Shown piece by piece: positions 2,296-62,794 of a stretch of DNA of 64,000 nucleotides. The notes beneath the pieces were generated by a model, which was given only the letters and a program-made list of their open reading frames with translations, did not search any database and was not told the origin of the DNA. Origin of the DNA: Macrostomum lignano (Eukaryota). The stretch covers positions 1 to 64,000 of the forward strand of contig NIVC01002316.1 in assembly GCA_002269645.1 (NCBI GenBank), written 5' to 3'. A program made the translations under genes and the position numbers. Within the stretch, counting starts at the first letter, position 1. Every line of letters begins with the position of its first letter.

Positions 2296-5200
2296 TTAAA
2301 AGGAATTCTTTACAAAAGATAGAAACTCTGGCTTAGTAAGCAGAGTCCAATAAGCCTTGGGAGTTTCTGGGGCAGCGGCGGGGGCGGCGTCGGAGGCTTC
2401 GCCGTTCGCGCTGGCCTCGGCGGCTGAAGAGTCCGACGGTTGATCAGCTTGTTGGCTTGTCCGGCGCCGCTTGGCCAGAAAGAAGTTGAATTTATTGAAA
2501 ACATCGGCCGCAACAGCCGTCTCCTCGGCGTCCCACAGGCGGAGCGACTCCTCCATTGTGAGACGTCGCTTTAGAGAGGGCGGCGCGGCGGCAGGATAGG
2601 CGAAGTCGGGCTGGTAATCGGCGATAGGCTCCGCAGGACAGTCAGGTTTTTTCTGCTCTTTGCGCGCTCTATGGCGACGCTCACGGCTTCGGCTGCGCCT
2701 GCGATTGCTGCTTCGGCTGCGACTATTGCTGCGTCTTCTATCACTGGTGCTGCTTTTGCGACGGCTTCTGCTGTCGCTGCTTTTTCTATGGCCGCTGCTG
2801 ATTTTACGATTACTGCTGCTACTGCTATTGCTGCTGCTGCTACTGATCCGACGACTACGACTGCTTCTTCTATAGTGGCTGTCGTTTCTGCGATAGTTGC
2901 TGCCTCGGTCGCTGCTGCGATACCTGTCCTGACTGCGGCTCGGCCTGCGCGATTCAAACAGGTTGAATTGTACTAAAATTCACTGCCTCTATGATGCATG
3001 CAAATGCGAAATACAAAATGCGATTACAGACTTACCTGTCGCTAGCAGCAGCCCTACTGCCGCTATTATGGCTGCTGATACCAGGAATGACTGCAGGCAC
3101 CGGTTTCCCAGATTTATTCTGAGCGGCAGGTACTGGTGAACCGGATTTCGATGTGACAGGCACCGGTGTTTCTGTAGATGCTGCGATCAGCGAGTCTGAA
3201 ACCTGTGGATCTGGAACAGGTGCAGCTGATACCTGTGGATCTGGCACAGGTCCAGCTGATACCTGTGGATCTGGAACAGGTGCAGCTGATACCTGTGGAT
3301 CTAGAACAGGTACAGCCGATACCTGTGGATCTAGAACAGGTACAGCTGATTCCTGTGGATCTAGCACAGGTACAGCCGATACAGCCGATACCTGTGGATC
3401 TGGTGGCACAGGTGTGGCAGAATCCCGTAGCAATGACACAGGCGTGGCAAACACCGATGAAGCAGACTCAGGTGCGGCGGACACCAGTGGAGTAGACACA
3501 GGTGGAGCAGACACAGGTGCGGCAGACCCCTGTGGAGCAGACACAGGTGCGGCAGACCCCTGTGGAGCAGACACAGGTGCGGCAGACCCCCGTGGAGCAG
3601 ACACAGGTGCGGCAGAAACGGGTTTAGCGCCCGACCTGGCCGCCGCCAAGCGCACCCTGGGATCCCGACTCTCCAGCTGCTTGGCCTGCTCCTGGGCGGC
3701 CTTAGCGGCGGCCTCAATACGCTGCTTGCCGATAGCCTCGGCCGCCTGTTTCATCCGGTCGGCCAGGCCGCTGAAACAGTCTTGCAGATTGTAGCATCGA
3801 ACGGTTGAACGGCAGACTGGCGCCCACTGCGCGCCCGGGTCGGTCGAGCCTTGGCAGAGCAACTGGCGCCGGGGAATGGGCAGCCAGATCAGCACGTGAA
3901 TCAGATTCTTCGTGCGGCCCAGCATGCGGGTAGCGCTGTCTAGTTGAAGCCGCTTAGATAGCGCCGACTGCGACGGCACCAAATAGCAGAGCGCGCCGGC
4001 GCCGTCAGCCGATTCGGTCATGGGCGCCAGCAGCAGGCAGTCCTTGGTGATCAGCATCTCGCAGAGTGTCCGGGCCCGGGCGGCGTTAGACGGGTCGAAC
4101 AGTCCGGCCAGGTAGCTGACGTAGCCGGCGCTGGAGTCGGCCAGGCGGCAGACGGGCTTCTCCTCGGTCAGGGAGACGCCACAGTTGGCCAGGCGGGCCT
4201 CCAGATCGGCCGAGTCGACAACGCGGCAGGGGGTGGCCGACGGCAGCGAGCCGAGCTGCAGAAATGGCAGCACGGAGGGCGTTTTCTCAAGCGAGACCAG
4301 GCCGAGCTTCAGGCTGGGTCCCGCTGGCAGCAGGGGCAGCAGGACTTCGCCAACAAGGTAGGCGCCGTCGTTGAATTTCTTCACCCAATCTTGCCGATCG
4401 GGGTACACGGGCCGCGGCCGTCGTTGACTTCGGCTACGAATCGGGCTCGACTCAGTGGAAGATTCGGCGGAGGAGGACACGGCTTCAGCTGATGCTGCAG
4501 AGCACTTTGCATTTTCCTGCTGCTTCTGCTCAGGTTTAGGCGCATGCTCCAGCGTCTCAGCTTCATCCTTCTGATCCTGCTGCATTTGTTGTTGAACCTG
4601 CTGCGCCTGCGTCTCCTGTTGTTGTTGCTTTGGCTGCTTGCGGTCGAGTGTCGGCTGGGTCTTCCGCTTGAAGCACTGGTCCCTGATCTGGTGCACGGGA
4701 TTTGGGATAAACTATTCGATGTCTCAGAATATGCTTTGTATGCGAAGGTTGCCTATTCTAATCAGTAATCTACTAGTAATCTATCTGTAAATCTATTAAA
4801 AGCGATGCAAAAAATTAACTTATTAAAGATACCTAGTTCTCAATAAATGACAGATGCTCAAGATGCAAATTAATAAACACAAATATCGTAAGCAGAGAAA
4901 AGTTTCCTACAGGGCGTGCGCTGAGCTCGAACTCAAGCATCACAGCTTCACTGTTGATGACGAATGGCCTAGATTCAAGAGGCAAGTCTGCGTTTGCTGG
5001 TGAGCAAATTAGGGAGCAGGAAATGTCCCATAAACGCGACACTGGAAAGGTCTCAACAGGGAGACTCTATTAGTGGACAGCTTCAGAGCCTGGTTCAAAT
5101 TCCAGGCCAAAATGCTTACCAAGCCATCGAACTTGAATTGAACAGCAGCCACAGGCAGCACGTGCCTGGGATGGTCCATCAATTCCAGGTCGGGTCCGTA

Positions 5201-6370
5201 CTCAAATAGGAACACCTGGCTGCTATGAAATCCGGCTTCAATTATGCTTGCAGCTTTTCTATTAATCAATTCATCGTCTGTAAGCGTCTGACGAACGCTC
5301 TCGTGACAGTTGTACATTGGCTGTGGCTCCACAACGCTGTCGCCCTCGGTCCAGTAGCAGACGCGGCCGCGAACGTAGCGACAGATGACCAGCCAGCCAG
5401 TCTTTGGCAGGCCGAACTTCGGTGAGATCCGATCGACGTACCGGCCCAGGGAGACGCCGGTAGAGCCGATGGCCAGAGTAGAGTCTGGCAGGTTGCCGCG
5501 GCGGATGCCGTTCTCAGCAATGCCGCGCAATCGATCCATTACGTCCGGCACGGGCGCCAGGTAGACGAAACCGTACCGCTCATCCAGCTTGACGGAGCCA
5601 GCCAGGGCGGCCAGATTGCTGGCGTTTTCTTCGGCAATGGCGGCCTGGATCTCCGCCTTCTTGGTGGCGAACTGTGACAACAGAATTACTCAATTTGGTT
5701 ATTTTTGTGCACTAGAATTCGATATAGTACTACTAGTAGCAGCAACCAGCTAAGCGCATTTCTATAAACTGCTTATTTTTACCTTATCACCGAGGCTCTT
5801 GTTGCCGATAGCAAATACTTTTGACGGGGAAAATTTGCTTCTTAATTCCTTATTTAAGAAGCCGCGCGATATGATGCAGTTAATGTCGTGCTTGTACTCG
5901 TTGGAATTTAGGTCAACGCTGCGCAGAAATTCTGCAAATAGAAAGAAGAAAGGTAAGTAGTCTACAGCCTGAAAAAGCTATTTACTAAGGCTAAATTGGT
6001 TATTAGCTTAGTCACCCTTGGAGCTATGCGCCACTTTGGGCACCCGGATCTGTTTCAAAGCCTCTGTGCCAACGTAGCGCTCGTTAACAACATTTGGATG
6101 AAACCTGCCGGCCGAACCCGAAGCCATGGAATCGGCTGTCTGATTGAGGCCTCCAGACGCAGCGGCGGTGGTGACCTTTTTCTTCTTCTTTTTAATTGGA
6201 AAAGCCGAGCCAATATTATTATTGTTGCTGCAGTTGGCAATGTTATTATTGTCTTTTGGCCCGGAGCTTCTCTCCGACAGCGATAATGAAGGCGTTTGAC
6301 AGTGCCTCAACGCCTGGAATTGCGAGTTTGAACAGCGAGGTTTAAACGGCGGCATTAAGGGTGAATTCAT
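2296..6370 (-). CDS. TASOR: TASOR/FAM208-like protein: pseudo-PARP (DUF3715) + SPOC-like domain + Pro-rich repeats + RS-rich tail, about 1178 aa
   Basis: Exons 6370-6016, 5931-5783, 5671-5120, 5066-4911, 4711-3036, 2944-2296; all GT-AG and phase-consistent (3537 nt). GNKSLGDKFATKKAEI, GVSLGRYVD and QVFLFEYGPDLELMDHPRHVLPVAAVQF parallel the human TASOR motifs as I recall them (NELLEKEFTEKRREL, GVYLSRYAD, QYYFYEYGFDELRRRPRHVCPYAVVSF). The downstream segment (LCEMLITKDCLLLAP...LCYLVP...LIHVLIWLP) fits the SPOC position. The exon 4/5 and 5/6 junctions are less certain. Confidence 0.8.
3190..3615 (-). repeat. Exonic 30-bp tandem repeats (GSAAPVSAPQ / VSAAPVPDPQ) in TASOR-like exon 5
   Basis: 10-aa periodicity in ORF 3032..4696, with DNA-level repeats such as GATACCTGTGGATCTGGAACAGGTGCAGCT. 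Confidence 0.85.
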
Positions 6371-11655: not shown

Positions 11656-13605
11656 TCAATCAGATACAATTTCGCCCTCTTCTAGTTCGATTTCATCATC
11701 AAAGTATAAAAGTTCACTGTTTAAATGCGAGGAAGCACAGTTTATATCTGTTGTGGCCATATTTATAACAGCCTTGTTAATCTTTGATGAAGATGATTGG
11801 CTAGATGAGCCTTCATTTCGACGCTTTCTATGTTGATGTAGATCTGAAGTTGACGAGTGTTTAGACTTGGATTTGTCTGATACAGAAGTAGGTGCGCTGG
11901 ACTTTCTGTGCACTGAAGTACCTGAGACGGATGTACGTGCGCTGGACTTTCTTTTCAGCGAGGCAGTTAAAGCAGACGTAGATGATTTGTGCTTACTTTT
12001 AACCGACGCGTTTTTGGCTAACCTTTGAGTATTAACGATAGATTCCTTTTGTTTAGAGGCAGACTTCATAGGTTTATAGGACTTTTTCCGTGCTAACGCA
12101 TCCGAGGCAGCGATCAGCTCAGGCTTGTTTTTTGTCGTGTCAATTTTGACAGAAGTCAGTGTGGTCGATTCGCTACCAAGGGTAGAGGTACTTGCAATCG
12201 ATTTTTCAACCGACGCAGATGTGACCGGAACAGACCTGTTAGAAGTTGAAACTCTAAAAGAGCCAAACAACGAAGCAGCAGTACCGGAAGCAGAGTTTCT
12301 GAAAGCGTCTAGCAACGAAGTAGAAGCTTTGGAAGCTGTTGTTACAACAGGGGTAGAGCAGCGGGTAGAGCTCAACGATGAAGCAGCAGCTGTGACAGAA
12401 GAAGCAACAGTGGTGGAGCTGCAGGTACCGGTAGAGCTAAGCAATGAAGAAGCTGTGGCATTAACGGAAGATTTTAAATTTGGTGCAGCCTGTATCAAAT
12501 TATCCGAACCGGTTGCAGAAGAAGTGGTGGTCACAGCTGACGCAACCGTTACTTCATTAATAGACGGTGCAGCTGTTCCAGAGTCAACTACTGAAGTCGA
12601 AGTCGTGCCACGTGAGCTGGGTATCGCAGGATTTATTACAGAAGCTTTACATGTAGAAGTTCCAGAAGCTAAGTCAGCCGACATTGTTTCCAACAGACGG
12701 ATTTGCATAGGACAGGAAGCCTTAGCAGGAAGAGGCGGCAAAGGCTGTGCGAATAAGTCCATAGGAGGGAAAATGTTTAAATGAGGCGGCACAGGCAATG
12801 ATGGGGCTACTCCTACATTTCCTGAAAAGCAAGCCGCCATTACTGGGCAAGCCGGAAGTGGTGACGACTGAGGCGGCGGTTGGGGAAATACAACTTGAGC
12901 AGAAGAACCGCAGTTAGAGAAGGTTGAGACAGAAAATGGCATCGACATGAGAGGCGGTATCGCCATCGGACTTGATTGCTGAATGTGACCGTACGGTGCA
13001 GCGCCCGATGGTTGCGTTGAGTTCAAGACTGTCGAATAGTTTAGCAGGCCGGAGTCGCTGCTGCTGGAGCCTACCTGGCAAGACGACGCTGCTGATTCCG
13101 ATGAAGGGCGTACTAATGAGAACATCATCGGCGGCACCTGCAGACGATCGCTAGCAGCTTCTACAGAAGACTGCATGATTGGAGCTACGGCAGGTGGGAC
13201 GGACGCTGTCGTAGATTCAGAGACAGTAACAGCAGCGGTTGATGTAGCAGGGGTCGATCGGCGTCCGATGAACTCCAGCGCCTGCAGCTTAGACCAGCGG
13301 CTTCTCAGCTGGGTAACAATAATATCCTCAATGCCTTGAATAACGTTAAGCAAATCGTATATATTCGGAAGCGGCGAACTGAAACCACTGAGCTCTGTTA
13401 ACTCGTGCAACGCTTCAACGCATAGGCTGCACCAGACTGGCCAAGACTTCCGCACGCTGACAACGTCCGGCTGCCGATGCTCACCGGCGGCCAAGAGCGG
13501 TAGAAGCGCCGGCTCCAAAGCGATGGAAGAGAATGCGCGAACCAACTCAACGCGCAGTAGGTGGCGCAGCTCAGAGTCTGGCAGCCGGATCTGAGGAGCA
13601 AACAT
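11656..13605 (-). CDS. Ser/Thr/Ala-rich, probably nuclear protein of 649 aa: basic C-terminal region, terminal acidic LEEGEI motif, no recognised family
   Basis: 1950-nt uninterrupted ORF. A globular-looking N-terminal ~115 aa is followed by low complexity sequence, K/R clusters (LKRK, RKRR) and the end DDEIELEEGEIVSD*. The true 5' end is uncertain; a TTTGCTCCTCAG acceptor at 13591 may join upstream exons. Confidence 0.7.
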   Translation of the reverse strand: MFAPQIRLPDSELRHLLRVELVRAFSSIALEPALLPLLAAGEHRQPDVVSVRKSWPVWCSLCVEALHELTELSGFSSPLPNIYDLLNVIQGIEDIIVTQLRSRWSKLQALEFIGRRSTPATSTAAVTVSESTTASVPPAVAPIMQSSVEAASDRLQVPPMMFSLVRPSSESAASSCQVGSSSSDSGLLNYSTVLNSTQPSGAAPYGHIQQSSPMAIPPLMSMPFSVSTFSNCGSSAQVVFPQPPPQSSPLPACPVMAACFSGNVGVAPSLPVPPHLNIFPPMDLFAQPLPPLPAKASCPMQIRLLETMSADLASGTSTCKASVINPAIPSSRGTTSTSVVDSGTAAPSINEVTVASAVTTTSSATGSDNLIQAAPNLKSSVNATASSLLSSTGTCSSTTVASSVTAAASSLSSTRCSTPVVTTASKASTSLLDAFRNSASGTAASLFGSFRVSTSNRSVPVTSASVEKSIASTSTLGSESTTLTSVKIDTTKNKPELIAASDALARKKSYKPMKSASKQKESIVNTQRLAKNASVKSKHKSSTSALTASLKRKSSARTSVSGTSVHRKSSAPTSVSDKSKSKHSSTSDLHQHRKRRNEGSSSQSSSSKINKAVINMATTDINCASSHLNSELLYFDDEIELEEGEIVSD

Positions 13606-16256: not shown

Positions 16257-19200
16257 TTATGAGAGCCTGGCGAGCTTAGCTCCAAGGTGATGGCGTGATT
16301 GATAGGGCTCGTCTGCGGCTGCAGCCAACGGCGATATTGAATCTTCTGAGTCTGACTGACGGCCCGATCGCCGGGGTGGCCGCTGGTTTGGCCTCCGATC
16401 AGGTCGATGAATATTTGGTCGCTGGTTTGGTCGCTGCAGTGGTTGCCTACGCAGATAAACAGAAATACGATGATTACGGGTGATTTTCTACTAAAATAGT
16501 CAAGCGCGCACAGACTGTTAAAATAATGCTAATAGAGGACAGGGTATAGGCTAGGATGAAAGAGCTGAAACCAGGATAGAACCCCAGTAGTTTCGGGTGG
16601 TGGCAGCCAGGACAGAACCCCAGTAGTTTCGGGTGGTGGCAACCAGGACAGAACCCCAGTAGTTTCGGGTGGTGGCAACCAGGATAGAACCCCAGTAGTT
16701 TCGGGTGGTGGCAACCAGGACAGAACCCCAGTAGTTTCGGGTGGTGGCAACCAGGATAGAACCCCAGTAGTTTCGGGTGGTGGCAACCAGGACAGAACCC
16801 CAGTAGTTTCGGGTGGTGGCAACCAGGACAGAACCCCAGTAGTTTCGTGTGGTGGCAACCAGGACAGAACCCCAGTAGTTTCGGGTGGTGGCAACCAGGA
16901 CAGAACCCCAGTAGTTTCGGGTGGTGGCAACCAGGACAGAACCCCAGTAGTTTCGGGTGGTGGCAACCAGGATAGAACCCCAGTAGTTTCGGGTGGTGGC
17001 AGCCAGGATAGAACCCCAGTAGTTTCGGGTGTTAGCAACCAGCTGTTACCAGCAGCGCAATAAATCTGTAGAGATCCTACCTTTCACTGAACCATCGCTG
17101 ATTCTGTGCACTTCTTGTTGGCGAGCGAGGCGTCTGCTCACGGAGGACTTCGTCTCGATTACTCATAGTTCGACTTTTGACGCCGCTGTACCAGCCCAGC
17201 CGCGTCTTGGCCTCCGCAACCATGGAATCAACGTCGACACTTTCCAGACGCTTGTTCAGCTGGACGCTGGCCCAGTTGGCGACGTGCTCAGCAACCAGCC
17301 TGAGCAGCAGGCGGCGGTACCGAGGCCACAGAGTGCTAGCCATGTAGCGATTGGTGCACAGCTGCACCTGGTCAGGTCTGGCTGGCGTCCCAGCGAGCAG
17401 AGCAAAGCCGGACACGGCCATACTGGCCAGACAGTCCACCAGCTGCACAGGAAACTGCGCTACCGCGCGCCGAGCAGAACTGGCAGCGAATGAGACGAAT
17501 TGGCCAATAACGCTGAGCTGATGGATTGCCTGAGCATCGAGAGTCCACTGCAGAGTTACCAGCTCGTTAAACGGACGAAGCAGATTAAATAGTTCGGGCA
17601 TTCGAACCGCATAACTAACCCACCGTTTCTTAGACAATTGGCTCGAATAGGCAGTAAACGAAGGCAGCTGCATGCTGACCTGAGCGCTGCCGGCTGGCAA
17701 GCCAAGGTCGGCCAAAATTGGCGAAATCTGCTGGTTCATAAGCGGGCTGATTGTGAATAATGATCCCGCAGACAAGTTCTGATCCTGCGACTGACAGTCC
17801 CGATGCCTTAGATCCCGATCCCGTTAGATATGAGTCCCGATCCCGTAAGATATGAGTCCCGATCCCGTAAGATATGAGTCCCGATCCCGTAAGATATGAG
17901 TCCCGATCCCGTAGCTAAGAGTCCCGATCCCGTTAGATATGAGTCCCGATCCCGTTAGATATGAGTCCCGATCCCGTTAGATATGAGTCCCGATGATGTA
18001 CGAGCTAGCTAAGAGTCCCGATCCCATAGCTTAGATTCCCGATCCCATAGCTAGGAGTCCCGATCCCGAAGCTAAGTGTCCCGAAAACGAAGCTAAGAGT
18101 CCCGATTCTGTAGCTATAGCTAAGAGTCCCGATTCCATAGCTAAGAGTCCGGATCTCGTAGCTAAGAGTCCCAATTCCGTAGCTAAGGGTCCCAATCCCG
18201 TAGATAAGAGTCCCGATCCCGTTAGATATGAGTCCCGATCCCGAAGCTAAGTGTCCCGATCCCATAGCTAGGAGTCCCGATCCCGAAGCTAAGTGTCCCG
18301 AAAACGAAGCTAAGAGTCCCGATTCCATAGCTAAGTGTCCCGATCCCATAGCTAAGTGTCCCGATCCCATAGCTAAGAGTCCTGATCCCGAAGCTACGAG
18401 CGTAATTGTCCCGATCCCGAAGCTAAGTGTCCCGAAAACGAAGCTAAGAGTCCCGATTCCATAGCTAAGTGTCCCGATCCCATAGCTAAGTGTCCCGATC
18501 CCATAGCTAAGAGTCCTGATACCGAAGCTAAGTGTCCCGAAAACGAAGCTAAGAGTCCCGATTCCATAGCTAAGAGTCCGGATCTCGTAGCTAAGAGTCC
18601 CAATTCCGTAGCTAAGGGTCCCAATCCCGTAGATAAGAGTCCCGATCCCGTAGCTAAGAGTCCCGATCCTGTAGCTAAGAGTCCCGATCCCGTAGCTGAA
18701 AATCCAAATTCTCCAACTTATTTTTTGACCAAAGACCTGAGAAAAACTTCCCCGAGAACGCCAAAATCTAATACACTGGCTACAAGTCATAAATCATGGC
18801 CCAAACCTTACCATCTGGTTAAGCGCCTGTGACACCTTCTCGGAGGTCCAGCCTCGGCCGCCAAGCCGGTCGGCGATTTCGGCGGTGGACCTGGCGCAGG
18901 CCATGCCGAACGCCCGAGCAACAGCCTCGGCGCTCAAGTCCGGTCGCTGTCCGATTAGGCGATAAATCCGACGCTCAATTCGATTTCGAATCTGCCTGCG
19001 CCACCTGAGGCTCTTGCCAGATTTGATAACGAAGCCATGGCTGTTGCAACAGCCTAAGCAGTACTGCATTAGCGAGGTGTTGACGCAATTGTAGAATTCC
19101 GATAAGCACGCCTCAGAATCCAGCGTATCCAGTTCATCCTGAGCCGAGCTCGATGCCAGCGAACTGTCACCGCTTGTTGACGCGCACGAAGAAGCCGCCG

Positions 19201-19264: not shown

Positions 19265-20115
19265 TGCTGAAATATTACAGATGCTATTTCATTGTCTGCA
19301 GTCTATGAGCACATGCCTAGAACACGCAAACCTACTTATTAGCAATGAAGCTTGAACTAATTCAAAATGTGATATTATTTCTAGCCATACCGTTAGAACC
19401 AAAAAGATCGGTTAATCTCCAACAGAGATAAAAATCAAACTACGAGCCCTACAGCTGTACTCAACAACATTAGAAAGTCACCACCTTTGAGAGTGAGCAG
19501 TAAATTATAGTTTATTATTGACTTTTGAGTGAAGCAACTTGCGTTACGCGACGCAGAGTTGAGCTGGGTGAGGAGGGATTGGGAAGAGCGGAGGGCGAAG
19601 ATTGGATGGATTCAAGCTTCCGCCCGGTTTTCATTGTTTTTTCAAGCATTTTTTAATATCAAAATGGTTGGCAAGGAGATAGACGCTGGTCGAAAGACAC
19701 TGCTCACTGGGGTAAAGGGTGGCGACTTTTTAATGTTGCTGAGTATATGATGACTGCCAGCATAGAGAGTAATGAATGAAGCACATAAACAGATTTGCGT
19801 AAAATAATACTTTATTTAGCTGTCTAGAGCGCAACCTCAAATTCTTCTTACAGATGTACTACTTTTAAGTTGAATTCATGCAAAATATGCTGCCTAATCG
19901 TATCAGCGATAACTAGATCTTGCACTAGCAAGACTTTATTGCCACCGATCCGAAAAAAGCTAAAGACGAATAAAACAAACTTTCTCGGCCAAATAAGTCC
20001 AGATAAGACAACAGACAAGCGAGGGGTGTGTTAAACATTGGCCACACAAAAATTAAAGTATAAAACTGTCGACTCGATTGTCCAAATCGAAAGCATTGCA
20101 AGCCCAAAAAGAGCC

Positions 20116-21837
20116 ATGACGGAAAACGATTCAAACATAGAGAAGAAATCCGAAGACTCGGAATGCCGACCCAGAACTTTTGAAGACCTGCTGGGCCTAC
20201 TGGGGCCCAGAGGTCCCTACCAGATACTGCTGCTGGCATGTCTCTGCTTTGTCCAAGCCTTCCCTGGTATGGTTACGCTGTCAAACGCATTCGCCAAGTC
20301 CTCGCTGATGAAGCACCAGTGCGACATCAACTCAACGGTTGGCAACGAACTTATAAGCAGCTGTTGGTCGGCAGAAGCTACAGAGGATGAGTGCCGCGTG
20401 CTGGTTAACTGCACTAATGTGCCTGGCGGCAATGTAGCTACATCGCAATGCATCGACTGGACATTCGACAGGTCAGTCTTTACGGAAACAATAGCAAGTA
20501 GGTTTCGCTTGGTCTGCGGCAACAGTTACCTTGCCGACCTGGCTGCTACCGGCTATTTTGCCGGATTCCTTCTAGGAGCAAGCCTATACGGTCTATTTGG
20601 CGACAGGTTCGGCCGACTACCAGCCTCTCTGGTAAGCATGGCCAATCTGACACTTGCAACTGCTCTGGCGGCACTGTCTCCAGTGTACTGGCTATACGCT
20701 GTAGCGATGGTGCTAGCTGGCTTTGGCACAGGCGGCATGCTTAGTGTGCTTTACTCGGCTACCATCGAGTGTACGGACTCTGCGCACAGACTGGTGTGGG
20801 GCTTTACTGTCAACCAGGGCTGGTCACTTGGCGTATTCACGGTAACTCTGGTTGCCTATTTGGAGCGAAACTATCAGGCCCAGCTGCTGTGGCTGTGCGC
20901 AACAAGTTTGCCGCTCTATTTGCTCTTGCTGCTATCTGGCGAATCGGCCCGCTGGTTGATCTCAGCTGGCAGAGTAGAACGAGCCGATTCTGTCATTGCG
21001 CGGGTTGCCCGTCTAAATAGAACAGCCGACAAATTGCCAGCAGACTTCAGCGCTGAGGAGATCTACCTGCACGAGCAGCGGGCAGTCGCGGTAATGAATA
21101 CCGGATCCGAAATTCGCACGGGCGGCAACCTCTTAAATCTGTTTCGAACGCCGGGACTGCGCAGAGCGACTCTGCTAAGTTGGCTGCACTGGTTCGCGGC
21201 CTCCATGACCTACTTTGGCATCAGCTTGGCTGGGGACTCAATCGGCGGAGACGTATTCCTAAATGTGGTTCTCGTATCGGCAGTTGAATTGCCAGCCAGA
21301 TTCCTCGGCATGCTACTGTCAATCTGCCGCATTGGACGCAAGCCTGTACTCTATGTTTCATTCGCCTTATCGGCCGTATTCTTGGCAGTCATGGTGGCGG
21401 TGTTCGATCAGTCAGTGTCTGGCAGTGCGGCAGCAAACGTGGCACTGGCAGTTCTAAGCAAGTTAAGCATCACAGTCGCCTTTGACTGCGTGTGGCTCTA
21501 CTACAGCGAAATGTTTCCAACTGTGATTCGCAGCGTCGGTGTTGGCTCAGGCTCAACTATGGCCAGGGTTGGCGCCATCCTGAGCACCCAGATGCTGCCG
21601 CTGCGCTCAGTATGGGGGCCATTGCCATTTGTGATATTTGGCATTGGACCGCTGCTTGCCTGCCTAGTGATCTACTTCCTGCCAGAGACTGTGGGCCAGG
21701 ATCTGCCCGAGACAATCGCCGATGGCGAGAAATTTATTCTGAGCAATAGTGGCCAATTGTGCTGTGGCAAAAAGAGTACAAAGGTTGTCCATCCTAATGT
21801 AGTTGCTATGGAAACTGGTGCAGCAAAATTGGCTTAA
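20116..21837 (+). CDS. SLC22-family organic cation/carnitine transporter (MFS), intronless, about 573 aa
   Basis: FEDLLGLLGPRGPYQ start, Cys-containing first loop (WTFDRSVFTETIASRFRLVC), GDRFGR and IGRKP MFS motifs, ESARWL, YYSEMFPTVIRSVGVG, LPET. ATG 20116 is preferred over the TTG at 20038. Confidence 0.95.
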   Translation: MTENDSNIEKKSEDSECRPRTFEDLLGLLGPRGPYQILLLACLCFVQAFPGMVTLSNAFAKSSLMKHQCDINSTVGNELISSCWSAEATEDECRVLVNCTNVPGGNVATSQCIDWTFDRSVFTETIASRFRLVCGNSYLADLAATGYFAGFLLGASLYGLFGDRFGRLPASLVSMANLTLATALAALSPVYWLYAVAMVLAGFGTGGMLSVLYSATIECTDSAHRLVWGFTVNQGWSLGVFTVTLVAYLERNYQAQLLWLCATSLPLYLLLLLSGESARWLISAGRVERADSVIARVARLNRTADKLPADFSAEEIYLHEQRAVAVMNTGSEIRTGGNLLNLFRTPGLRRATLLSWLHWFAASMTYFGISLAGDSIGGDVFLNVVLVSAVELPARFLGMLLSICRIGRKPVLYVSFALSAVFLAVMVAVFDQSVSGSAAANVALAVLSKLSITVAFDCVWLYYSEMFPTVIRSVGVGSGSTMARVGAILSTQMLPLRSVWGPLPFVIFGIGPLLACLVIYFLPETVGQDLPETIADGEKFILSNSGQLCCGKKSTKVVHPNVVAMETGAAKLA

Positions 21838-23499: not shown

Positions 23500-24230
23500 A
23501 ATAATCAGGTAAGTCGCAAAAAGGATCAGGTAAGTCGCAAAAGAAGCAAACTAAGTCGCAAAAAGGATCAGGTAAGTCGCAAAAGGGTTAGGTAAGTCGC
23601 AAAAAGGATTAGGTAAGTCGCAAAAAGGATTAGGTAAGTCGCAAAAGGGTTAGGTAAGTCGCAAAAGGGTTAGGTAAGTCGCAAAAGGATTAAGTAAGTC
23701 GCAAAAGGGTTAGGTAAGTCGCAAAAAGGATTAGGTAAGTCGCAAAAGGATTAGGTAAGTCGCAAAAAGGATTAAGTAAGTCGCAAAAAGGATTAGGTAA
23801 GTCGCAAAAGGGATTAGGTAAGTCGCAAAAAGAATCAGGTAAGTCGCAAAAGGATCAGCTAAGTCACAAAAGGATTAGGTAAGTCGCAAAAGGATCAGGT
23901 AAGTCGCAAAAGGATTAGTTAAGTCGCAAAAGGGTTAGGTAAGTCGCAAAAAGGATTAGGTAAGTCGCAAAAAGGATTAAGTAAGTCGCAAAAAGGATTA
24001 GGTAAGTCGCAAAAGGATTAAGTAAGTCGCAAAAAGGATTAGGTAAGTCGCAAAAGGGTTAGGTAAGTCGCAAAAGGGTTAGGTAAGTCGCAAAAGGATT
24101 AGGTAAGTCGCAAAAAGGATTAAGTAAGTCGCAAAAAGGATTAGGTAAGTCGCAAAAAGGATTAGGTAAGTCGCAAAAAGGATTAGGTAAGTCGCAAAAA
24201 GAAGCAACTAAGTCGCAATAAGAGGGAAGT
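23500..24230 (+). repeat. 20-22-bp minisatellite (GGATTAGGTAAGTCGCAAAAA), about 34 copies
   Basis: Direct tandem array inside the 3.3-kb element; the TAAGTCGCA motif recurs near both element ends. Confidence 0.95.
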
Positions 24231-33212: not shown

Positions 33213-36200
33213 TTAGTTCAGCTCAGCATCACTGAAGCCCAACTCGAGAAGAAAAGTGCGAACTTCTTCTAAAATATTTTCGGACGCCTCAAGCGCAGAC
33301 TTCGCATCCTTGCGACTCAGCGCCGACGGGTCGCTGGATCCGCCCGGGTAGCGACAGTCAACGGAGCCTGCGATCGGGTCAAAGCGCCAGCAAAAGTCAA
33401 AAGACGACGCTGCATGTCCTGTTGGACAATCAAGCCAAGATTGTCTTGCAGCCTGTGGCTCTTTACTGCCGGCTTGCCGGACGCCAAAACCGCCGCCTTG
33501 AGCGCTTTTTCAGCCGCCTGATGCGCTTTGTAGACAGCCCAGTTCGCTGCTAGGCGCTGATCTCTGTGTATGTCATTACCGCCGGCGCGGTGGTCGTCGC
33601 GAGCAACGCGCCAATAGTGCAGGGCGATATCGCGACCTGGCGAGACAGTGGCAGAGCTGATGCAGGATGTACTGCAAGAAGAGCGGAAAATTTTGGCCGG
33701 AAAACTGAACTCTCCACCTGATGTAGCGGCTGTTGGAGCGCGTCGTTTCCTAGTTGACAACGTCGTAGTAGAATCAGGTGAGTCCAACTCTAATAGCAAA
33801 TGACCGGCAGTTCCTACGTCATCAGCATCACTCTGCCATTTTGAGAGCATCTCGCGCACAAAATTGGATCCAATGCGCGCAACTTGTGTATTTACATAAT
33901 TGTGCAAGGCTTGCACAAACGATAGACTGCTGGTGCTTTCTGTTCTGTGATCAAAGGTTGCTGAATGTCGGCCAGGACTGCAGTGCTGAACCACTCTTCT
34001 AACAGCGAGTCTGCAATCGCTTGAGGCTGGCAGCGACTGACCTTGCTGCAGCAGACGCGAAAGTTCCTCCTGAAGCGCAGCATCTTTCTTCACTGGAGTC
34101 GCCTATGTCCGCCAAGCTTTCTCTCTGCTGTCTGATGTTAAAAAGTTCTAGTGCTGTACTGCGCACAGTACATTGGCTCCACTCAACCGTGTACTCCTGC
34201 AGCACGAGTTACTACTGCTCCTGTCACTCCTAGCAACTACTCTAGCAAGCACGAAAGTATCAGTGTCATCATTCTCAGTCCGTTGGTGCAGAGCTACTAA
34301 CTCACCGGGCTCAAAACTGCAGTAGACGGTCATGCTGGAAGCTGGTAAGTTCTTGGAGTTGACTGCGAAGCATGGCCGGAACCAAACTGCAAGTGCAACG
34401 TCACAGCGCTCTTGCTCTGCACCTTCATGGCCAAAAGAACAAGTGGCTACATTGTCTTTGTCAAGCTCCGTTGCTATCAAGGTTAAGTCTTCAAAACGCA
34501 GCCACGTTTGCATATTGCCGCAAATATCCGTCTTAAATCCAAGCACACTAGAAACAAAGGAATTAACAACAACTGTGAGCTCCTTGTACCATAACGTAAT
34601 ATAGTCATTGCCACAGTCACTGTCTGTGTGCCTCACGTAGATAGTTTTCTCAACTAAAAAACTTTTCTTTTCCTGCTGCGAGTCAACGAATACTTTGTCA
34701 TCTACTGATAATACGGACATTAAGTCCTTCATGCACTGTACTTTTAGCTCGACCAGAGCAGCTTTCAGCTTGTCCCGACAAGTCTCAATGGTTAAGCGGC
34801 CACGACCATCCGCATGTTGAATGATTCGGACCAGTCCGTTCAACATATCAGGATGAATCAGCTTCTTCTTCACAGTCTGAGCAACTAAGCAGCCATTTAT
34901 TCTACAGTGCTGACTGTTGTCTGCCAGGCGCTCGTTGACAAGTTGACTCAGTGTCCGGACACCCAGATTGTCGCGCAGATATTTGTTTAACACATTCTGT
35001 TTGTCCGAGTTAAGGTTTGCAAATTCGATATCTATAAGCTGTACATGTAACTCACAGTGACCTCCAATTCGCTTGTAATAGTCCGGTGCGTCGTTGATAG
35101 CCAGATCCAGCACATTCTCCATACAGAGAACCTGCTTATCCTTATGTTTAGAGCTAGTTGTGAGATACAGCGGTGTTGTTTTCTGACTGAAATTTTGCTC
35201 ATCGCGATCTAGCAGATTAGTCATAACAGATAAGCATTCGGAAACTACATTCATTTCTTCTTCTCCAAGAGCATAACTTGTGTCTGATTTTTCCTTCAAG
35301 CACTGCAGCGCATAGTATACTTGACTCATCGTAATTTCTCTGGTCGCGCCAAAAGTTTCGAATACTTCTGAAAACTGCATCAGTTCTCGTGGACAAGAAA
35401 TAATATAAGGCGGTATTTCTTTTGAACTAACAAGGCAAATGCACTTGGCGGGTAGAAATACTTTCCATTATCAACGATGACGAACGCGACCGCCTTAATA
35501 TTTCAAGACTTGCAAATTCACTTAATCGTAAATTTTTTTTGATATGCAGATAAATTTTATTCATAATCTTTTTCCTAAGTTCCACATTTTCTTCTGATAG
35601 ACGCACAGACAGAAAAGAACTGCTCGAAAGCAAATTATTCAAGTGCTTCTTGAAGTCATCGGCAGTGGGAACCTGGCGTACTGCAAGCTTGCCAAAATGC
35701 TGACTGATCTGCTTCACGTACTCTGGACAGATTGTGCTTGCCGTCCAGCACAGAAATCTATTAGAGAACCGAACTGAGTCTCTAAGCTTAAGCATTTTTG
35801 ATTGCTTGACTTCAAAAAGAGACTGTAGCTCATTGAGCTCATCAGAGACAACGAATGAATGTTTGCCAGGCGGCCCAAGCAACTATCACTTAGAGCGGAA
35901 CCTGGTGTTTTAAGTACGATATTATGGCTTCAGATTTTTTTGTTACGTCGGCCGTAAATTTTCCCTGTCCCTCTTCTTCGAGATTTTTAGCAAACGAAAG
36001 GAGTAGGTCTTCTGAGCATTCGGAAATCAGTCCAGCATGATTTAATAGCTTTCGCATACTTTGCTGCCGATAGTGTGAAGGCAAAAGCTCATCCTCCGGA
36101 ACAATATGCTTGAAGAGTTCAACGCTGTCATCATAGAACGAAGTGGCTAAACGCCATCTGCCATGAGCGAACACAATCTCTGTGGATTTTAGAAGAGCCA

Positions 36201-39200
36201 AAACATTCTTCTGTTCAGCTCTCAGCTTTTGTTCCGGCAACAACTGGGAAACTTTCTTCTGAAGCATATCGATATGTTGAAACTTCGTACTGTTAGAAAA
36301 TTCAGAAAACACTGGCAAAAATGAAGCAGCATACGCACCCCATTGGTCCAAATTGGAAAAGCTCAGGCAAGTAAACAGGTTCTTTAGCTGGTTTTCTTGT
36401 TTAAGTAAAACCGTAGATTGATCCAATTTCCATAAGTGCATGTCAGAGGTGGCTATCTTAGCTGACAAGACGTAGACAGTTTTGTCGCTTACGCTGACGC
36501 ATTGACCATCGAGTGTGACGAATATCGGCAACTTCTTTACAATTGTACACAGCTGCTCAACTTTGTAAGCCGACAACAAAGACTGCCAGTTTTCTTGGAT
36601 GTATTGTAAAACAACGAAAGCTTGCCTGCTGCTAGGTGACTTGCTCATTAGAATACAATTAAAAACACGGAGCATTTTAGCCGGTCGATCTACCGAGCCG
36701 CAGTGGCTCCGCAAGAAAGAATTGTCCGAGTTGATTTTCGGACAATGCAGCTCATCAAGAGCAGCGAGAAGATCGATGTTTAGATTGCTGAGCGATGCAT
36801 ATCCATCTACGCATAGAACACACGGCAAAAGAGAAACTGTTGCAAGTTTCGATTGAGAAGAGTCATTTGAGCCGACTCAATAGGAAGCAAAGCTGCATTT
36901 GATAAACAAGAGAGTTTATTTAACTGATGCGATTCAGAGTATAATTTCGATGAAAGGAATTCCCAAACATTAGTCAACCATTCGTCAGAAACAAAAGCAT
37001 CACCAGTCGAGTTTATGTTAGGAATCAAGCGTCTACTTGAGCAGATCAAATCAGGGAAAAACTTGGCAAGGAGCTCACTGAAATCAGCAATTCCAAACTC
37101 TTTGAAAAGTCTTGATTCGATTGCCTTTTTGTACGACTCAAAATTTTCGGAGAAAATTTTTAGAACGAGTTTATGAACAAACATTTTTCGAGCATTTGGA
37201 TCGGAGAAAATTCGTTCTGACCATGAGGTCAGGAATGCCGCTTTCTCTGTTGAAAATAATTCAAGGACATTGTCAGCTGCCAAGTTGAGTGGAGTTCCAG
37301 TAAGCAGTTGCACTTCATTATGCGCATCTGAGGCCGTCGTGTATGATCGCGTAATGAATTCGATCACACAAGCGACATTTTCTGCATTCTGGAAAGCGGT
37401 TTCCTCCACTGACTTTGGGAGCGCTCTGCGAAGTCTTGCACACAGTGGCCCATTTAGATAGTTTGACAAAACTGCTGGACTCAAAACGGGAATGTAGCTC
37501 TTTGTTTCTAGACTGCAGTTATACACGCGAAAGCGCGATATTAAATGTTTCAACTTTTCGTTTTCAACGACCAATGGAATACCCAACTGCATCAGCACTG
37601 GTCGCTGATCATGTATGCTCTCGCTTTCCACTAAAAAGCATGTCTTGCCGTCAACTGATTCCTCCGATGTGGCAAGTGGAAGCCAAGAAACGGTTCTATT
37701 CGCTCCAGACTGGCATGGTAGCAGAGCCCATCGGCCTGTCAGAAGTTCTCCATACAACCTATTTGCCATTTTGGCCCACAATGAACTACTTTCTCCTAGT
37801 TTTGGTAGCAAACAGCAGTAGCAATCAATTGAAAGGTCAGGCTGCTGTTTGATTGCGTCCAGCATCGTTGCATAGCAGTGGGGAAGAATTTCACATGTGA
37901 GCATATCGTTCCACTGCGTCTCTGCGTCCACTGAATGACCGCACCACAGAGCGCGCCTTGACGGGTCAAGTACAAAGCAACCGTTAATATGAACCGGTAG
38001 TTTCGTGCTTATTGGCAGTGGCAAAAGCGAGTACACACGATAAATCTCCGTGTCTCTGTGAGTACTCTGATTAGACAGCCTGGCAGCGACGCCTACTTTT
38101 GGAAGGATTGGCCAGCCTCCAGCGGCAACTTTTTTCTCAAGCTCCTTCAGTTGAGCAACAGGCCCATTCTGTGGCAGGCTCACACACTGAGCTATCATCC
38201 ATTTTTCAGTAGCGACAGAGCCTTGTTTTTTACTGCCTAATTTGTCCGCCTTCTCGCTAATCTCCAGAGTGTAAGCAATTGTGTCGCATGTCAAATTGGT
38301 CAGTGCAGCACCCGGCTGCTTCAGCGACATGCCAACGCTGCGACAAGATGCATTGAATGCAGAAAAATCACCTATTGATGTCGAGGCTCGAGCATTCGCT
38401 ACACAAATCTCTGTGATCGTTCCGTCCAGGTGCACCTCCATCAAGGTGATGCGTCGGACATTTGTAAGAAAGAGCATTGTACTGGCAATTTCACTTTGGA
38501 ATTCTTCGAAGAGTGCTTCGATCATAGCGCTACTGACTGAAGAGCTGCAGATCTTGGACTTTTCCGCTTGATCAGGAGTTCTCAAGGGTAATCGAAAAAT
38601 CGTGCATCCAGCCTGTTGCAGACGTCCTGGTAGGAAGCCCTCCAACGCGTCCTTGAACATTTCCTTGTGTCTCTGGGTCAGTAGATATTTGGCACCTGGA
38701 ATATTTGTACCAGCCAGATGTGTGTACCTGCAGTGAGGATCCAGAACACAGAAAGTATCGCCATTGCTAATTAACTGTGGTACGTCTGTAGCGTTGTACA
38801 CACAGTTGAATCCAACACCAAAACGGCCAGTCTTCCACGCTTCAGACTGCTTTGATCCAACGCCCAAGCTCTGAATGCCCTTCAAGTCCGACTCGGTGAA
38901 GACAGAGTTGCTGAACGCCAAAAGTGCAGGCCCCTGCAACTCATGCCAGGAATCACTCAGCACTTGCTTTCCAGGTAGCTTGCGCTTGTCATTTACAAAC
39001 ACGACTTCTGTTGCTTCCGCATCGTCAGCATTTTGAATAAGTTCTTTAAAGAGCTCAATGCCAAGAGGGTAACCCCTTAGGATTCCTTCTAGACGAGTGG
39101 TAAGATTCTCGCTTTGGCCAAAAGGCTCACAAATCTGTCGGAGGGTCTGTTCTCGTTGAGTTGGCACTCCAAGGCGCTCGCAGATCTCATAGGACAGACA

Positions 39201-54886: not shown

Positions 54887-54890
54887 GCCA
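54306..54890. repeat. 23-bp minisatellite, about 25 near-perfect copies, at the 5' end of the bZIP CDS
   Basis: Unit ATGGCATGGGATACTGGCTGTGA (plus strand). Confidence 0.95.
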
Positions 54891-61587: not shown

Positions 61588-62300
61588 AGCTGACACCCAC
61601 AATGACACCTACAATGACTCAACTGACACCTACAATGACACCTACTTTCCTCTCTCGTACAGTGACTTAACTGACACCTACAATGACTCAACTGACATCT
61701 AAAATGACTCAAATGACACCTACAATGACTCAACTGACACCTACAATGACTCAACTGACACCTAAAATGACTCAACTGACGCCCACAATGACTCAACAGA
61801 CACCTACAATGACTCGACTGACACCTAAAATGACTCAACAGACACCTACAATGACTCAACTGACATCTAAAATGACTCAAATGACACCTACAATGACTCA
61901 ACTGACACCTACAATGACTCAACTGACACCTACAATGACTCAACTGACGCCTAAATGACTCAACTGACACCTACAATGACTCAACTGACACCTACAATGA
62001 CTCAACTGACACCCACAATGACACCTACAATGACTCAACTGACACCTATAATGACTCAACTGACACCTACAATGACTCAACTGACACCTAAAATGACGCC
62101 TACAATGACTCAACTGACACCCACAATGACGCCTGCAATGACTCAACTGACACCTACAATGACTCAACTGACACCTAAAATGACTCAATTGACACCTACA
62201 ATGACTTAACTGACGCCTACAATGACTCAACTGACACCTACAATGACTCAACTGACGCCTAAAATGACTCAATTGACTCCCAAACATCTCTCAACTGACA
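61588..62300. repeat. 21-bp minisatellite
   Basis: Unit CAATGACTCAACTGACACCTA. Confidence 0.95.
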
Positions 62301-62794
62301 CCAGTAACGACACACCAGGCATTACAAAAAACGGGCCTTCTGGCTTCACAATCTTATTCATCATGCGTAAGAAAAGGTCAAACCCACTGAAAAATGTCAA
62401 AAAGGACAAAACACAAACTGGAATATAGTGAGGCAACGATCAGTTTACGCTTTCATTGCAAATTCCTAGCATAATTTCTTTGAATTCCCGAGGTTCGCAT
62501 TCCATTTTACTAGTTTGGCTTGTGTCATTTGTATCAGTGTTTCTGCAAACAAAGGCGGGCCTGGCTTTGCACCCCCCTTTGCCGCTCTGGTATTGTAGTG
62601 TCCCCGAGTGCAGATCAATGACAAAGCATTGCGATATTGCGTAATCATTTGCGTTGTGGCTTTGTTGGTCCTAATAATGGCCTCAGTTAAATGTGTCATT
62701 ATTATGTAAGTAATAGTTAAAATCAAACCAATATTCCATTGGTAGTCTGTCCGAACAAGCATGTTAATTTTCATGGACTTATCCTGAATTCTAT

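What the first reader, a model, noticed from the sequence alone, without database searches (positions are those of the whole stretch)
2296..6370. A TASOR-like HUSH scaffold in an invertebrate-type genome
Joining six exons gives the TASOR domain order: pseudo-PARP/DUF3715 with the diagnostic FEY...PRHVxP motif, then a SPOC-like domain. Established: TASOR scaffolds the HUSH complex (with MPP8 and periphilin), which silences L1 elements, retroviruses and intronless transgenes, and is characterised almost entirely in vertebrates. Inference: this looks like a flatworm-type genome heavily loaded with TEs, so it may run a HUSH-like, RNA-dependent silencing system that has not been described. The fragmentary ORF track hides this gene.
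Basis: partly seen in the sequence, partly recalled or inferred. Interest (0 to 1): 0.8.

Follow-up and report, generated by a model that had tools for sequence, protein, structure and literature searches.

The report
Flatworm TASOR-like pseudo-PARP (DUF3715) gene
This is a real, spliced gene of the flatworm Macrostomum lignano whose protein carries the same inactive-PARP-type domain as the human transposon-silencing scaffold TASOR, but such TASOR-like genes were already reported across invertebrates, and nothing here shows that a HUSH-like complex exists in the worm.

Summary
The gene is real and sits at the stated coordinates, on the minus strand from 6370 to 2296. Five GT/AG exons join in frame to give 1126 aa.

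- **DUF3715 domain: confirmed.** The Pfam score is above the curated cut-off (33.3 vs 28.5 bits). The only significant PDB match is the TASOR pseudo-PARP structure 6TL1 (E = 6.6e-9). The FEY...PRHV stretch aligns with TASOR's extended β8-β9 loop, including the tyrosine that Douse et al. found essential.
- **SPOC-like domain: weak support only.** Pfam and PDB sequence searches found nothing. Relatives appear only within M. lignano, even among 1.84 billion representative proteins. A low-confidence AlphaFold model (pLDDT 50) has three SPOC domains as its top Foldseek hits, at non-significant E-values of 0.06-0.28.
- **Other TASOR features: not found.** No DomI, DomII or PIN domain was detected.
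- **3' end: unsettled.** Whether the decapeptide repeats and the Arg/Ser-rich stretch are in the mature protein is unsettled.
- **HUSH partners: not searchable here.**

UniProt already labels near-identical M. lignano proteins as DUF3715 proteins. Schöpp et al. 2023 reported TASOR-like proteins throughout Metazoa. This is a new member of a known kind, of moderate to low interest.

The parts
2296..6370 (-). Whole coding region of the DUF3715 gene (ATG 6370-6368 to stop 2298-2296); 5-exon model, 1126 aa
   Evidence: in-frame join, all introns GT...AG; 92-98% identical M. lignano proteins; these proteins map onto the same exons.
6016..6370 (-). Exon 1 (aa 1-118 plus one base): Ser/Asn/Lys-rich N-terminus with a KKKKKK run (aa 60-65)
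   Evidence: P0001 and P0002 start at the same Met. Donor is GTGACT.
5783..5931 (-). Exon 2 (aa 119-168): start of the pseudo-PARP domain region
   Evidence: acceptor ...TTTGCAG, donor GTAAAA. The junctions are reproduced in database models P0001 and P0002.
5120..5671 (-). Exon 3 (aa 169-352): main part of the DUF3715 / pseudo-PARP domain
   Evidence: Pfam PF12509. PDB 6TL1 TASOR matches aa 214-349.
5153..5533 (-). Stretch matched by Pfam DUF3715 (aa 215-341; profile positions 25-150 of 150)
   Evidence: E=2.2e-7, 31.4 bits. E=5.9e-8, 33.3 bits. Gathering score is 28.5.
5162..5206 (-). FEYGPDLELMDHPRH (aa 324-338): counterpart of TASOR's extended β8-β9 loop (Tyr303-His316). Tyr326 sits at the position of TASOR Tyr305.
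   Evidence: Alignment printed. Loop bounds and the Y305A phenotype come from PMC7532188. I inferred the residue mapping from the two.
4712..5119 (-). Intron 3 (408 nt; 432 nt if the alternative acceptor at 4688/4687 is used, which drops 8 aa, FIPNPVHQ)
   Evidence: One search gives the model. Searches show the database models use the downstream acceptor. Both choices are phase 0.
4406..4711 (-). Gln-rich, presumably disordered linker (aa 353-454; 21% Gln)
   Evidence: composition; no predicted structure, though the model is very low confidence
3752..4405 (-). Middle β-rich domain (aa 455-672), the candidate SPOC-like domain. Detectable only in M. lignano paralogues at the sequence level.
   Evidence: only M. 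lignano hits, with P0004 at 39% identity. AF2 model, pLDDT 50, pTM 0.54, about 8 strands and 4 helices. Foldseek top 3 are the SPOC domains of RBM15 and SHARP (E 0.056-0.28); no Pfam or PDB sequence hit.
3632..3751 (-). Ala/Gln/Lys/Glu-rich long predicted helix (aa 673-712)
   Evidence: helix in both models, and the best-scoring part of the second; composition.
3036..3631 (-). Pro/Val/Ser/Ala decapeptide repeats (aa 713-911), encoded by 30-nt tandem repeats. Open in the exon-4 frame up to a GTAAGT donor. Near-identical database models P0001 and P0002 skip this region.
   Evidence: TRF, period 30; 554-aa ORF; weak coding score 0.04, the only stop-free frame; skipped in P0001/P0002, kept in P0003
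2647..2944 (-). Arg/Ser-rich region (aa 912-1010; 35% Ser, 30% Arg, three Tyr) at the start of exon 5. The reading frame is inferred, not shown.
   Evidence: phase continuity from the exon-4 donor to the conserved C-tail; composition; codon usage does not separate this frame from the +1 frame, and both are open
2296..2646 (-). C-terminal tail (aa 1011-1126) plus stop codon. It includes the RRLTMEESLRLWDAEE...NFFLAKRRR stretch present in database models.
   Evidence: the last 90 aa of P0001 are 100% identical to 2568-2299; coding-like score 0.22 in this frame only; no Pfam hit.

Best explanation
This is an intron-containing nuclear gene of Macrostomum lignano. It encodes a member of the DUF3715 family, the TASOR/TEX15-type pseudo-PARP or 'RDTS' domain.

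Shown:
- The domain is present.
- Its nearest solved relative is human TASOR.
- It keeps the extended β8-β9 loop with the tyrosine that TASOR needs for silencing.

Probable but not shown:
- The roughly 220-aa β-rich domain after a Gln-rich linker is a fast-evolving SPOC-like barrel. That would give the DUF3715-SPOC order of 'TASOR-like' invertebrate proteins.
- The protein continues into Pro/Val/Ser/Ala repeats, an Arg/Ser-rich region and a short conserved tail.

Inferred by analogy only:
- The protein is nuclear (poly-Lys run, Arg/Ser-rich region).
- It acts on nascent transcripts as an adaptor in co-transcriptional repression, as TASOR and TEX15 do.
- The pseudo-PARP domain would be the effector module. 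The low-complexity tail would supply RNA or RNA-processing contacts.

Whether it assembles a HUSH-type complex with MPP8-like and periphilin-like partners is open.
For: - Gene model: in-frame 5-exon join with canonical splice sites. The same exon 1-3 junctions appear in database proteins.
- Organism: M. lignano. A near-identical second copy in GCA_002269645.1 has almost no substitutions in exons or introns.
- DUF3715: above the gathering score.
- TASOR 6TL1: the sole significant PDB hit.
- Loop and Tyr305-equivalent: conserved (alignment plus PMC7532188).
- Middle domain: conserved against a 39%-identical paralogue at many hydrophobic, Cys and Trp positions. The top three Foldseek hits are SPOC domains, and Ku β-barrel chains appear further down the list.
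- Literature: TASOR-like DUF3715-SPOC-DomI proteins occur throughout Metazoa, and DUF3715 domains from TEX15 can replace TASOR's (PMC10578480).
Against: - No Pfam SPOC or DUF3699 hit, even at E<=10, and no PDB sequence hit.
- The fold matches are not significant and rest on a pLDDT-50 model.
- The second model, covering pseudo-PARP plus middle domain, failed (pLDDT 31). The PARP fold itself was therefore not confirmed by structure here.
- No DomI, DomII or PIN domain was found.
- Database models of near-identical copies leave out the repeats and the Arg/Ser-rich region, and codon usage does not settle that frame.
- There is no expression evidence. The exact model proteins are absent from the 15-billion-protein collection.
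- The function is entirely by analogy.
Confidence: 0.6

Rival explanations
1. It is a DUF3715 protein with a lineage-specific architecture, not a TASOR orthologue. Only the pseudo-PARP domain is shared. The middle domain is a flatworm invention. The protein works without any HUSH-like complex, for example as an SR-like factor linked to RNA processing.
For: - The middle domain has relatives only within M. lignano, among 1.84 billion representatives and in the profile search.
- There are no SPOC, DUF3699, DomI, DomII or PIN hits.
- In Schöpp et al.'s DUF3715 tree only some invertebrate clades are marked as carrying SPOC-DomI (figure legend). Cnidarians have DUF3715-only proteins.
- An Arg/Ser-rich tail is typical of splicing-related proteins (the last point is my general knowledge).
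Against: - The top three fold matches are exactly the predicted fold, SPOC, out of 350,542 chains.
- The TASOR-specific loop and tyrosine are kept.
- The position of the β-rich domain directly after DUF3715 matches TASOR's order.
Confidence: 0.28
2. It is functionally closer to TEX15. On this reading it is a DUF3715 effector acting downstream of nuclear PIWI/piRNA in the germline and stem cells, not a HUSH-type somatic system.
For: - DUF3715 domains of TEX15 and TASOR are interchangeable in function (PMC10578480).
- Invertebrate DUF3715 proteins are hard to assign between the two.
- Flatworm stem cells and germline express PIWI proteins (general knowledge, not tested here).
Against: - The only PDB hit is TASOR. 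This is a weak argument, because no TEX15 chain was returned and I do not know whether one is in the PDB.
- No TEX15-domain Pfam hit.
- TEX15 architecture is reported as vertebrate-specific.
Confidence: 0.1
3. The locus is not a functional gene. It would be a decaying duplicate or a chance set of ORFs in GC-rich, repeat-rich DNA.
For: - The genome holds several near-identical copies.
- The low-complexity parts are open in more than one frame.
- There is no transcript evidence in hand.
Against: - 3381 nt stay open across five exons with canonical, phase-compatible splice sites.
- Domain hits are above curated thresholds.
- Coding-type codon usage appears only in the model frame for the middle domain and the C-tail.
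- A 39%-identical paralogue shows a conserved core pattern.
Confidence: 0.02

Closest known systems
Human TASOR (FAM208A), scaffold of the HUSH complex; pseudo-PARP structure PDB 6TL1
   Same: - DUF3715/pseudo-PARP domain near the N-terminus, with 6TL1 as the only significant PDB hit.
- Extended β8-β9 loop of similar length (15 vs 14 residues) with the Tyr305-equivalent and the closing PRHV...P stretch.
- A β-rich domain directly downstream whose best fold matches are SPOC domains.
- Long low-complexity regions.
   Different: - 1126 aa against 1670 aa.
- No detectable DomI (the MPP8-binding domain), periphilin-binding segment, DomII or PIN.
- The middle domain has no sequence similarity to anything outside M. 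lignano.
- It carries a 100-aa Gln-rich linker, decapeptide repeats and an Arg/Ser-rich region.
- Partners and function are unknown.
Invertebrate 'TASOR-like' proteins (DUF3715-SPOC-DomI) of Schöpp et al. 2023, PMC10578480
   Same: It is an invertebrate protein with DUF3715 followed by a probable SPOC-like domain. This is the class it most likely belongs to.
   Different: That class was defined by a match to a SPOC-DomI HMM. Here the SPOC part is supported only by a weak fold match, and DomI was not found. The paper's own HMM was not available to me.
TEX15 (vertebrate piRNA-pathway factor with DUF3715)
   Same: It shares the DUF3715 domain, which is functionally interchangeable with TASOR's.
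   Different: No TEX15 domains were detected. TEX15 architecture is reported as vertebrate-specific.
Periphilin N-terminal Arg/Ser/Tyr-rich disordered domain (PMC7544229)
   Same: Composition only. The modelled aa 912-1010 are 35% Ser and 30% Arg with a few Tyr and acidic residues. This resembles the description of periphilin's self-associating, HUSH-essential region.
   Different: - No sequence homology was tested or claimed.
- The flatworm region has far fewer Tyr.
- It lies in the same polypeptide as DUF3715.
- Its reading frame and its presence in the mRNA are not established.

Membership tests
DUF3715 / RDTS pseudo-PARP family (Pfam PF12509) | Match to the family profile above the curated gathering score | tested here: met
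   33.3 bits vs 28.5 on joined exons 2-3. 31.4 bits on the raw exon-3 ORF. The hit is lost when the whole 1126-aa protein is scanned.
DUF3715 / RDTS pseudo-PARP family (Pfam PF12509) | PARP-like fold | tested here: inconclusive
   The sequence alignment to the solved TASOR pseudo-PARP covers aa 214-349 (E=6.6e-9). The AlphaFold model of this region failed (pLDDT 31), so there is no independent structural check.
DUF3715 / RDTS pseudo-PARP family (Pfam PF12509) | Degenerate NAD+-binding and catalytic residues (hence 'pseudo') | not tested
   The PDB chain numbering could not be mapped with certainty onto the residue numbers of Douse et al. upstream of the loop deleted for crystallisation. I make no call on these residues.
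TASOR / TASOR-like (HUSH scaffold) | Extended β8-β9 loop with the essential tyrosine (TASOR Tyr303-His316, Y305) | tested here: met
   FEYGPDLELMDHPRH (aa 324-338) aligns with the TASOR loop and Tyr326 falls at Y305. Loop definition is from PMC7532188.
TASOR / TASOR-like (HUSH scaffold) | SPOC-like β-barrel directly after DUF3715 | tested here: inconclusive
   No Pfam or PDB sequence hit. The low-confidence model's top three Foldseek hits are SPOC domains, at E 0.056-0.28 and target-normalised TM-score 0.45-0.48.
TASOR / TASOR-like (HUSH scaffold) | DomI, the MPP8-binding domain after SPOC | tested here: inconclusive
   No DomI reference, solved structure or Pfam model, came back in any search. 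After the last strand the model shows about 30 poorly predicted residues and one long helix, with no second globular domain of about 110 aa.
TASOR / TASOR-like (HUSH scaffold) | C-terminal DomII/PIN domains (vertebrate TASOR) | tested here: not met
   No Pfam hit anywhere downstream of aa 352 at E<=1 to 10. The C-terminal 415 aa are low-complexity apart from a short tail. The definition of invertebrate TASOR-like proteins does not require these domains.
TASOR / TASOR-like (HUSH scaffold) | Periphilin-binding helical segment, and MPP8, periphilin, MORC2 and SETDB1 partners in the same genome | not testable with these tools
TEX15 | TEX15 domain(s) after DUF3715 | tested here: not met
   No such Pfam hit.

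The most novel reading that the evidence does not exclude
The flatworm protein could be a compact, single-chain version of the HUSH core. A TASOR-type pseudo-PARP and SPOC module would be fused to its own Arg/Ser/Tyr-containing self-associating, RNA-binding tail. That tail would do in cis what periphilin's disordered N-terminal domain does in trans. If so, RNA-directed silencing of the HUSH type would predate vertebrates and would not need the three-subunit layout.
Probability: 0.08. Interest if true: 0.7.

Novelty: new member of a known kind. Interest (0 to 1): 0.3.

Why it matters
HUSH has been studied functionally only in vertebrates. TASOR-like proteins are known in invertebrates only from sequence surveys.

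A clearly delimited TASOR-like gene in M. lignano, a laboratory flatworm with a repeat-rich genome, gives a concrete locus. It allows one to ask whether the DUF3715 module had a transposon-silencing role before vertebrates, and with which partners.

As it stands the result is an annotation-level confirmation, not a new system. Its practical value is a better gene model than the truncated or frame-shifted database entries. It also adds the observation that the domain after DUF3715 evolves so fast that profile searches miss it.

Tried and rejected
- **Pfam on the whole 1126-aa model.** No DUF3715 hit. The domain has to be scanned alone, and I guess the low-complexity remainder is the cause.
- **Word-index homologue search with the pseudo-PARP region alone.** It returned nothing, not even the near-identical P0001. 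I treat this as a tool limitation, not as evidence.
- **phmmer of the middle domain against 1.84 billion representatives, then a two-sequence profile search.** Only M. lignano proteins came back, so no deep alignment could be built.
- **AlphaFold on aa 100-700 with 5 sequences.** It failed at pLDDT 31, so I did not use it for a fold search.
- **Profile of the middle domain against PDB sequences.** Nothing relevant (best E 0.62, an enoyl-CoA hydratase).
- **dN/dS between the window and the second assembly copy L001.** Only 5 substitutions across the gene's exons and introns, plus a few single-base indels in L001 that look like assembly errors. This is not informative.
- **Codon-usage frame test.** It supports the model frame for the middle domain and the C-tail, weakly for the repeats, and not for the Arg/Ser-rich region.
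- **A sixth small exon inside intron 3 (ORF 4833-5042).** Rejected: no acceptor there is compatible with the phase-0 GTAAGC donor of exon 3, and exon 3 joins exon 4 directly in phase 0.
- **Exact look-up of the 1126-aa and 1118-aa models.** Neither is in the collection, so there is no transcript-derived confirmation.
- **Mapping the NAD+-site residues of Douse et al. onto the alignment.** Abandoned because the chain numbering is ambiguous.
Full report
**What is there.** The region 2296-6370 holds a gene on the minus strand. I read the reverse strand and located the junctions. Five exons join in frame: 6370-6016, 5931-5783, 5671-5120, 4711-3036 and 2944-2296. The coding sequence is 3381 nt and the protein 1126 aa. 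Every intron begins with GT and ends with AG.

The first three junctions are reproduced in independent database proteins. For exon 4 those proteins use an acceptor 24 nt downstream, at 4687. That acceptor is also phase 0 and drops eight residues, so both forms are possible.

**Whose genome.** The full model finds three proteins at 92-98% identity, all from Macrostomum lignano. Two UniProt entries are already named 'DUF3715 domain-containing protein', and one NCBI entry is hypothetical protein BOX15_Mlig000723g14. The NCBI protein lies on contig NIVC01004496.1 of GCA_002269645.1. That contig matches the window at 97.6% over 7.7 kb. Inside the gene it differs by only five substitutions and a few single-base indels. 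Those indels probably explain why the database models are truncated or change frame.

**The pseudo-PARP domain.**
- The raw exon-3 ORF hits Pfam DUF3715 at 31.4 bits. Joined exons 2-3 hit it at 33.3 bits. The gathering score is 28.5.
- Among 177,635 distinct PDB sequences, the only significant match is the TASOR pseudo-PARP structure 6TL1 (E=5.7e-8 and 6.6e-9). The next hit has E=0.22.
- Douse et al. (PMC7532188) describe a loop between the last two strands, Tyr303-His316. It is unique to TASOR among human PARP domains, and the Y305A change in it abolishes silencing.
- In the printed alignment the flatworm stretch FEYGPDLELMDHPRH (aa 324-338) lies on that loop. It is one residue longer. Tyr326 sits at the Tyr305 position, and the closing PRHV-x-P stretch is shared.
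- I could not say whether the NAD+-site residues are degenerate, because the numbering of the crystallised construct could not be mapped with certainty.

**The claimed SPOC-like domain.** After a 100-aa Gln-rich linker comes a roughly 220-aa Leu-rich region (aa 455-672).
- It has no Pfam hit even at E<=10 and no PDB sequence hit, alone or as a profile.
- A full HMMER scan of 1.84 billion representative proteins found only M. lignano sequences. These were two near-identical copies and one 39%-identical paralogue, A0A1I8I998.
- A profile search added only another M. lignano fragment.
- The alignment with the divergent paralogue keeps many hydrophobic, Cys, Trp and Pro positions. This points to a folded domain that evolves quickly.
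- With so shallow an alignment AlphaFold gave a poor model (pLDDT 50, pTM 0.54), with about eight strands and four helices followed by a long helix.
- Foldseek against 350,542 PDB chains nevertheless ranked three SPOC domains first: RBM15 7Z27, and SHARP 1OW1 and 7Z1K. E-values were 0.056-0.28, probabilities 0.44-0.69 and target-normalised TM-scores 0.45-0.48. Ku70/80 chains appeared further down.
- None of these matches is significant. Still, the fold that was predicted in advance came out on top. I count this as suggestive, not as a pass.
- A second model of aa 100-700 failed (pLDDT 31).

**What is missing for 'TASOR'.** Vertebrate TASOR has DUF3715, SPOC, DomI (which binds MPP8), a periphilin-binding segment, DomII and PIN. 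Invertebrate 'TASOR-like' proteins are defined by DUF3715-SPOC-DomI. Here I found no second globular domain after the β-rich region, only a long Ala/Gln/Lys/Glu helix. Nothing resembles DomII or PIN.

The rest of the model is low-complexity:
- Pro/Val/Ser/Ala decapeptide repeats, encoded by 30-nt tandem repeats.
- A 99-aa region of 35% Ser and 30% Arg.
- A 116-aa tail.

The tail is coding-like in the model frame only, and it is present in database models. The repeats are weakly coding-like. The Arg/Ser-rich frame cannot be told from the +1 frame by codon usage. Its support is that it alone links the GTAAGT donor of exon 4 to the conserved tail without further introns. The UniProt models of near-identical copies skip both the repeats and the Arg/Ser-rich region. 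Neither of my full-length versions exists as an exact sequence in the 15-billion-protein collection. The 3' half of the gene is therefore a hypothesis that needs transcript data.

**How it probably works.**
- Shown: a DUF3715 domain of TASOR type.
[quoted passage not shown] TEX15's DUF3715 can replace it.
- Inferred: the flatworm protein is nuclear (poly-Lys run, Arg/Ser-rich region). It would act as an adaptor in co-transcriptional, RNA-linked repression.

Nothing here shows whether it nucleates a HUSH-like complex. Its partners could not be searched.

The main rival is that only the pseudo-PARP domain is shared and the rest is a lineage-specific architecture with another role. DUF3715-only proteins are known in cnidarians and cannot be assigned cleanly to TASOR or TEX15.

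**Comparison with what is known, and novelty.** Schöpp et al. 2023 state that TASOR-like proteins occur throughout Metazoa. Appel et al. 2023 note DUF3715 next to a SPOC or SPOC-like DUF3699 domain in a lancelet. UniProt already tags the M. lignano proteins with DUF3715. I found no paper that mentions both TASOR and planarians.

The finding is thus a new member of a known kind. It comes with a better gene model and with the note that its post-DUF3715 domain is too divergent for profile detection.

The most novel reading still open is that the Arg/Ser/Tyr-containing tail does in cis what periphilin's disordered domain does in trans. That reading rests on composition alone and on an unconfirmed reading frame.

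**Context.** The window is not visibly rich in transposons. About 9.3 kb of it (15%) lies in 17 minisatellite arrays. The ORFs I scanned belong to ordinary genes: a sacsin-like gene, an MFS transporter and a bZIP factor.

**Verdict.** Interest is moderate to low.

Noticed in passing
window 33317-41658 (-): A large sacsin-like gene. The 1313-aa ORF at 36807-40748 has a Sacsin domain (E=3e-69), and the ORF at 33317-34093 has a HEPN domain (E=6.7e-7). Several long ORFs in a row suggest few or short introns.
   Followed up: partly
window 20038-21837 (+): A single 599-aa ORF with Sugar_tr and MFS_1 domains (E=1.9e-26): a transporter gene that looks intronless over its whole length.
   Followed up: partly
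window 53745-54887 (-): An ORF with a bZIP_2 domain at its C-terminal end (E=3.2e-13). It runs upstream into a 23-bp x 25 tandem array (54309-54887) that is open in all three frames, so the true N-terminus of the bZIP gene is unclear.
   Followed up: no
whole window; e.g. 362-800, 16569-17042, 17813-18697, 23507-24199, 44342-45447, 45802-46630, 50950-51863, 61603-62302, 62794-63499: Seventeen minisatellite arrays (units of 10-42 nt, TRF score >=200) cover about 9.3 kb, roughly 15% of the window. They generate many of the long spurious ORFs on both strands.
   Followed up: partly
window 11656-13605 (-); L001 1003-3645: A Ser/Thr/Ala-rich 649-aa ORF with no Pfam hit lies next to the DUF3715 gene. 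It may correspond to the 711-aa gene called upstream on the matching NCBI contig, but I did not align the two.
   Followed up: no
proteins P0004 (A0A1I8I998) and P0005 (A0A1I8FQ60), M. lignano; not in the window: These are divergent paralogue fragments (39% and 43% local identity) of the middle domain. They share a CYLVPS...RL.L...HV..WL stretch, so M. lignano has a small family built on this otherwise orphan domain. It is unknown whether those copies also carry DUF3715.
   Followed up: partly
L001 (NIVC01004496.1) vs window 2296-6370: The 2017 assembly copy is about 99.8% identical in the gene but has single-base indels in exons 3, 4 and 5. These are probably long-read assembly errors, and they would explain the truncated or frame-shifted NCBI and UniProt protein models.
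   Followed up: partly
tool behaviour: The word-index protein search with the 234-aa pseudo-PARP region returned no hit, although P0001 and P0002 contain that region almost unchanged. Negative results from that tool should be read with care.
   Followed up: no
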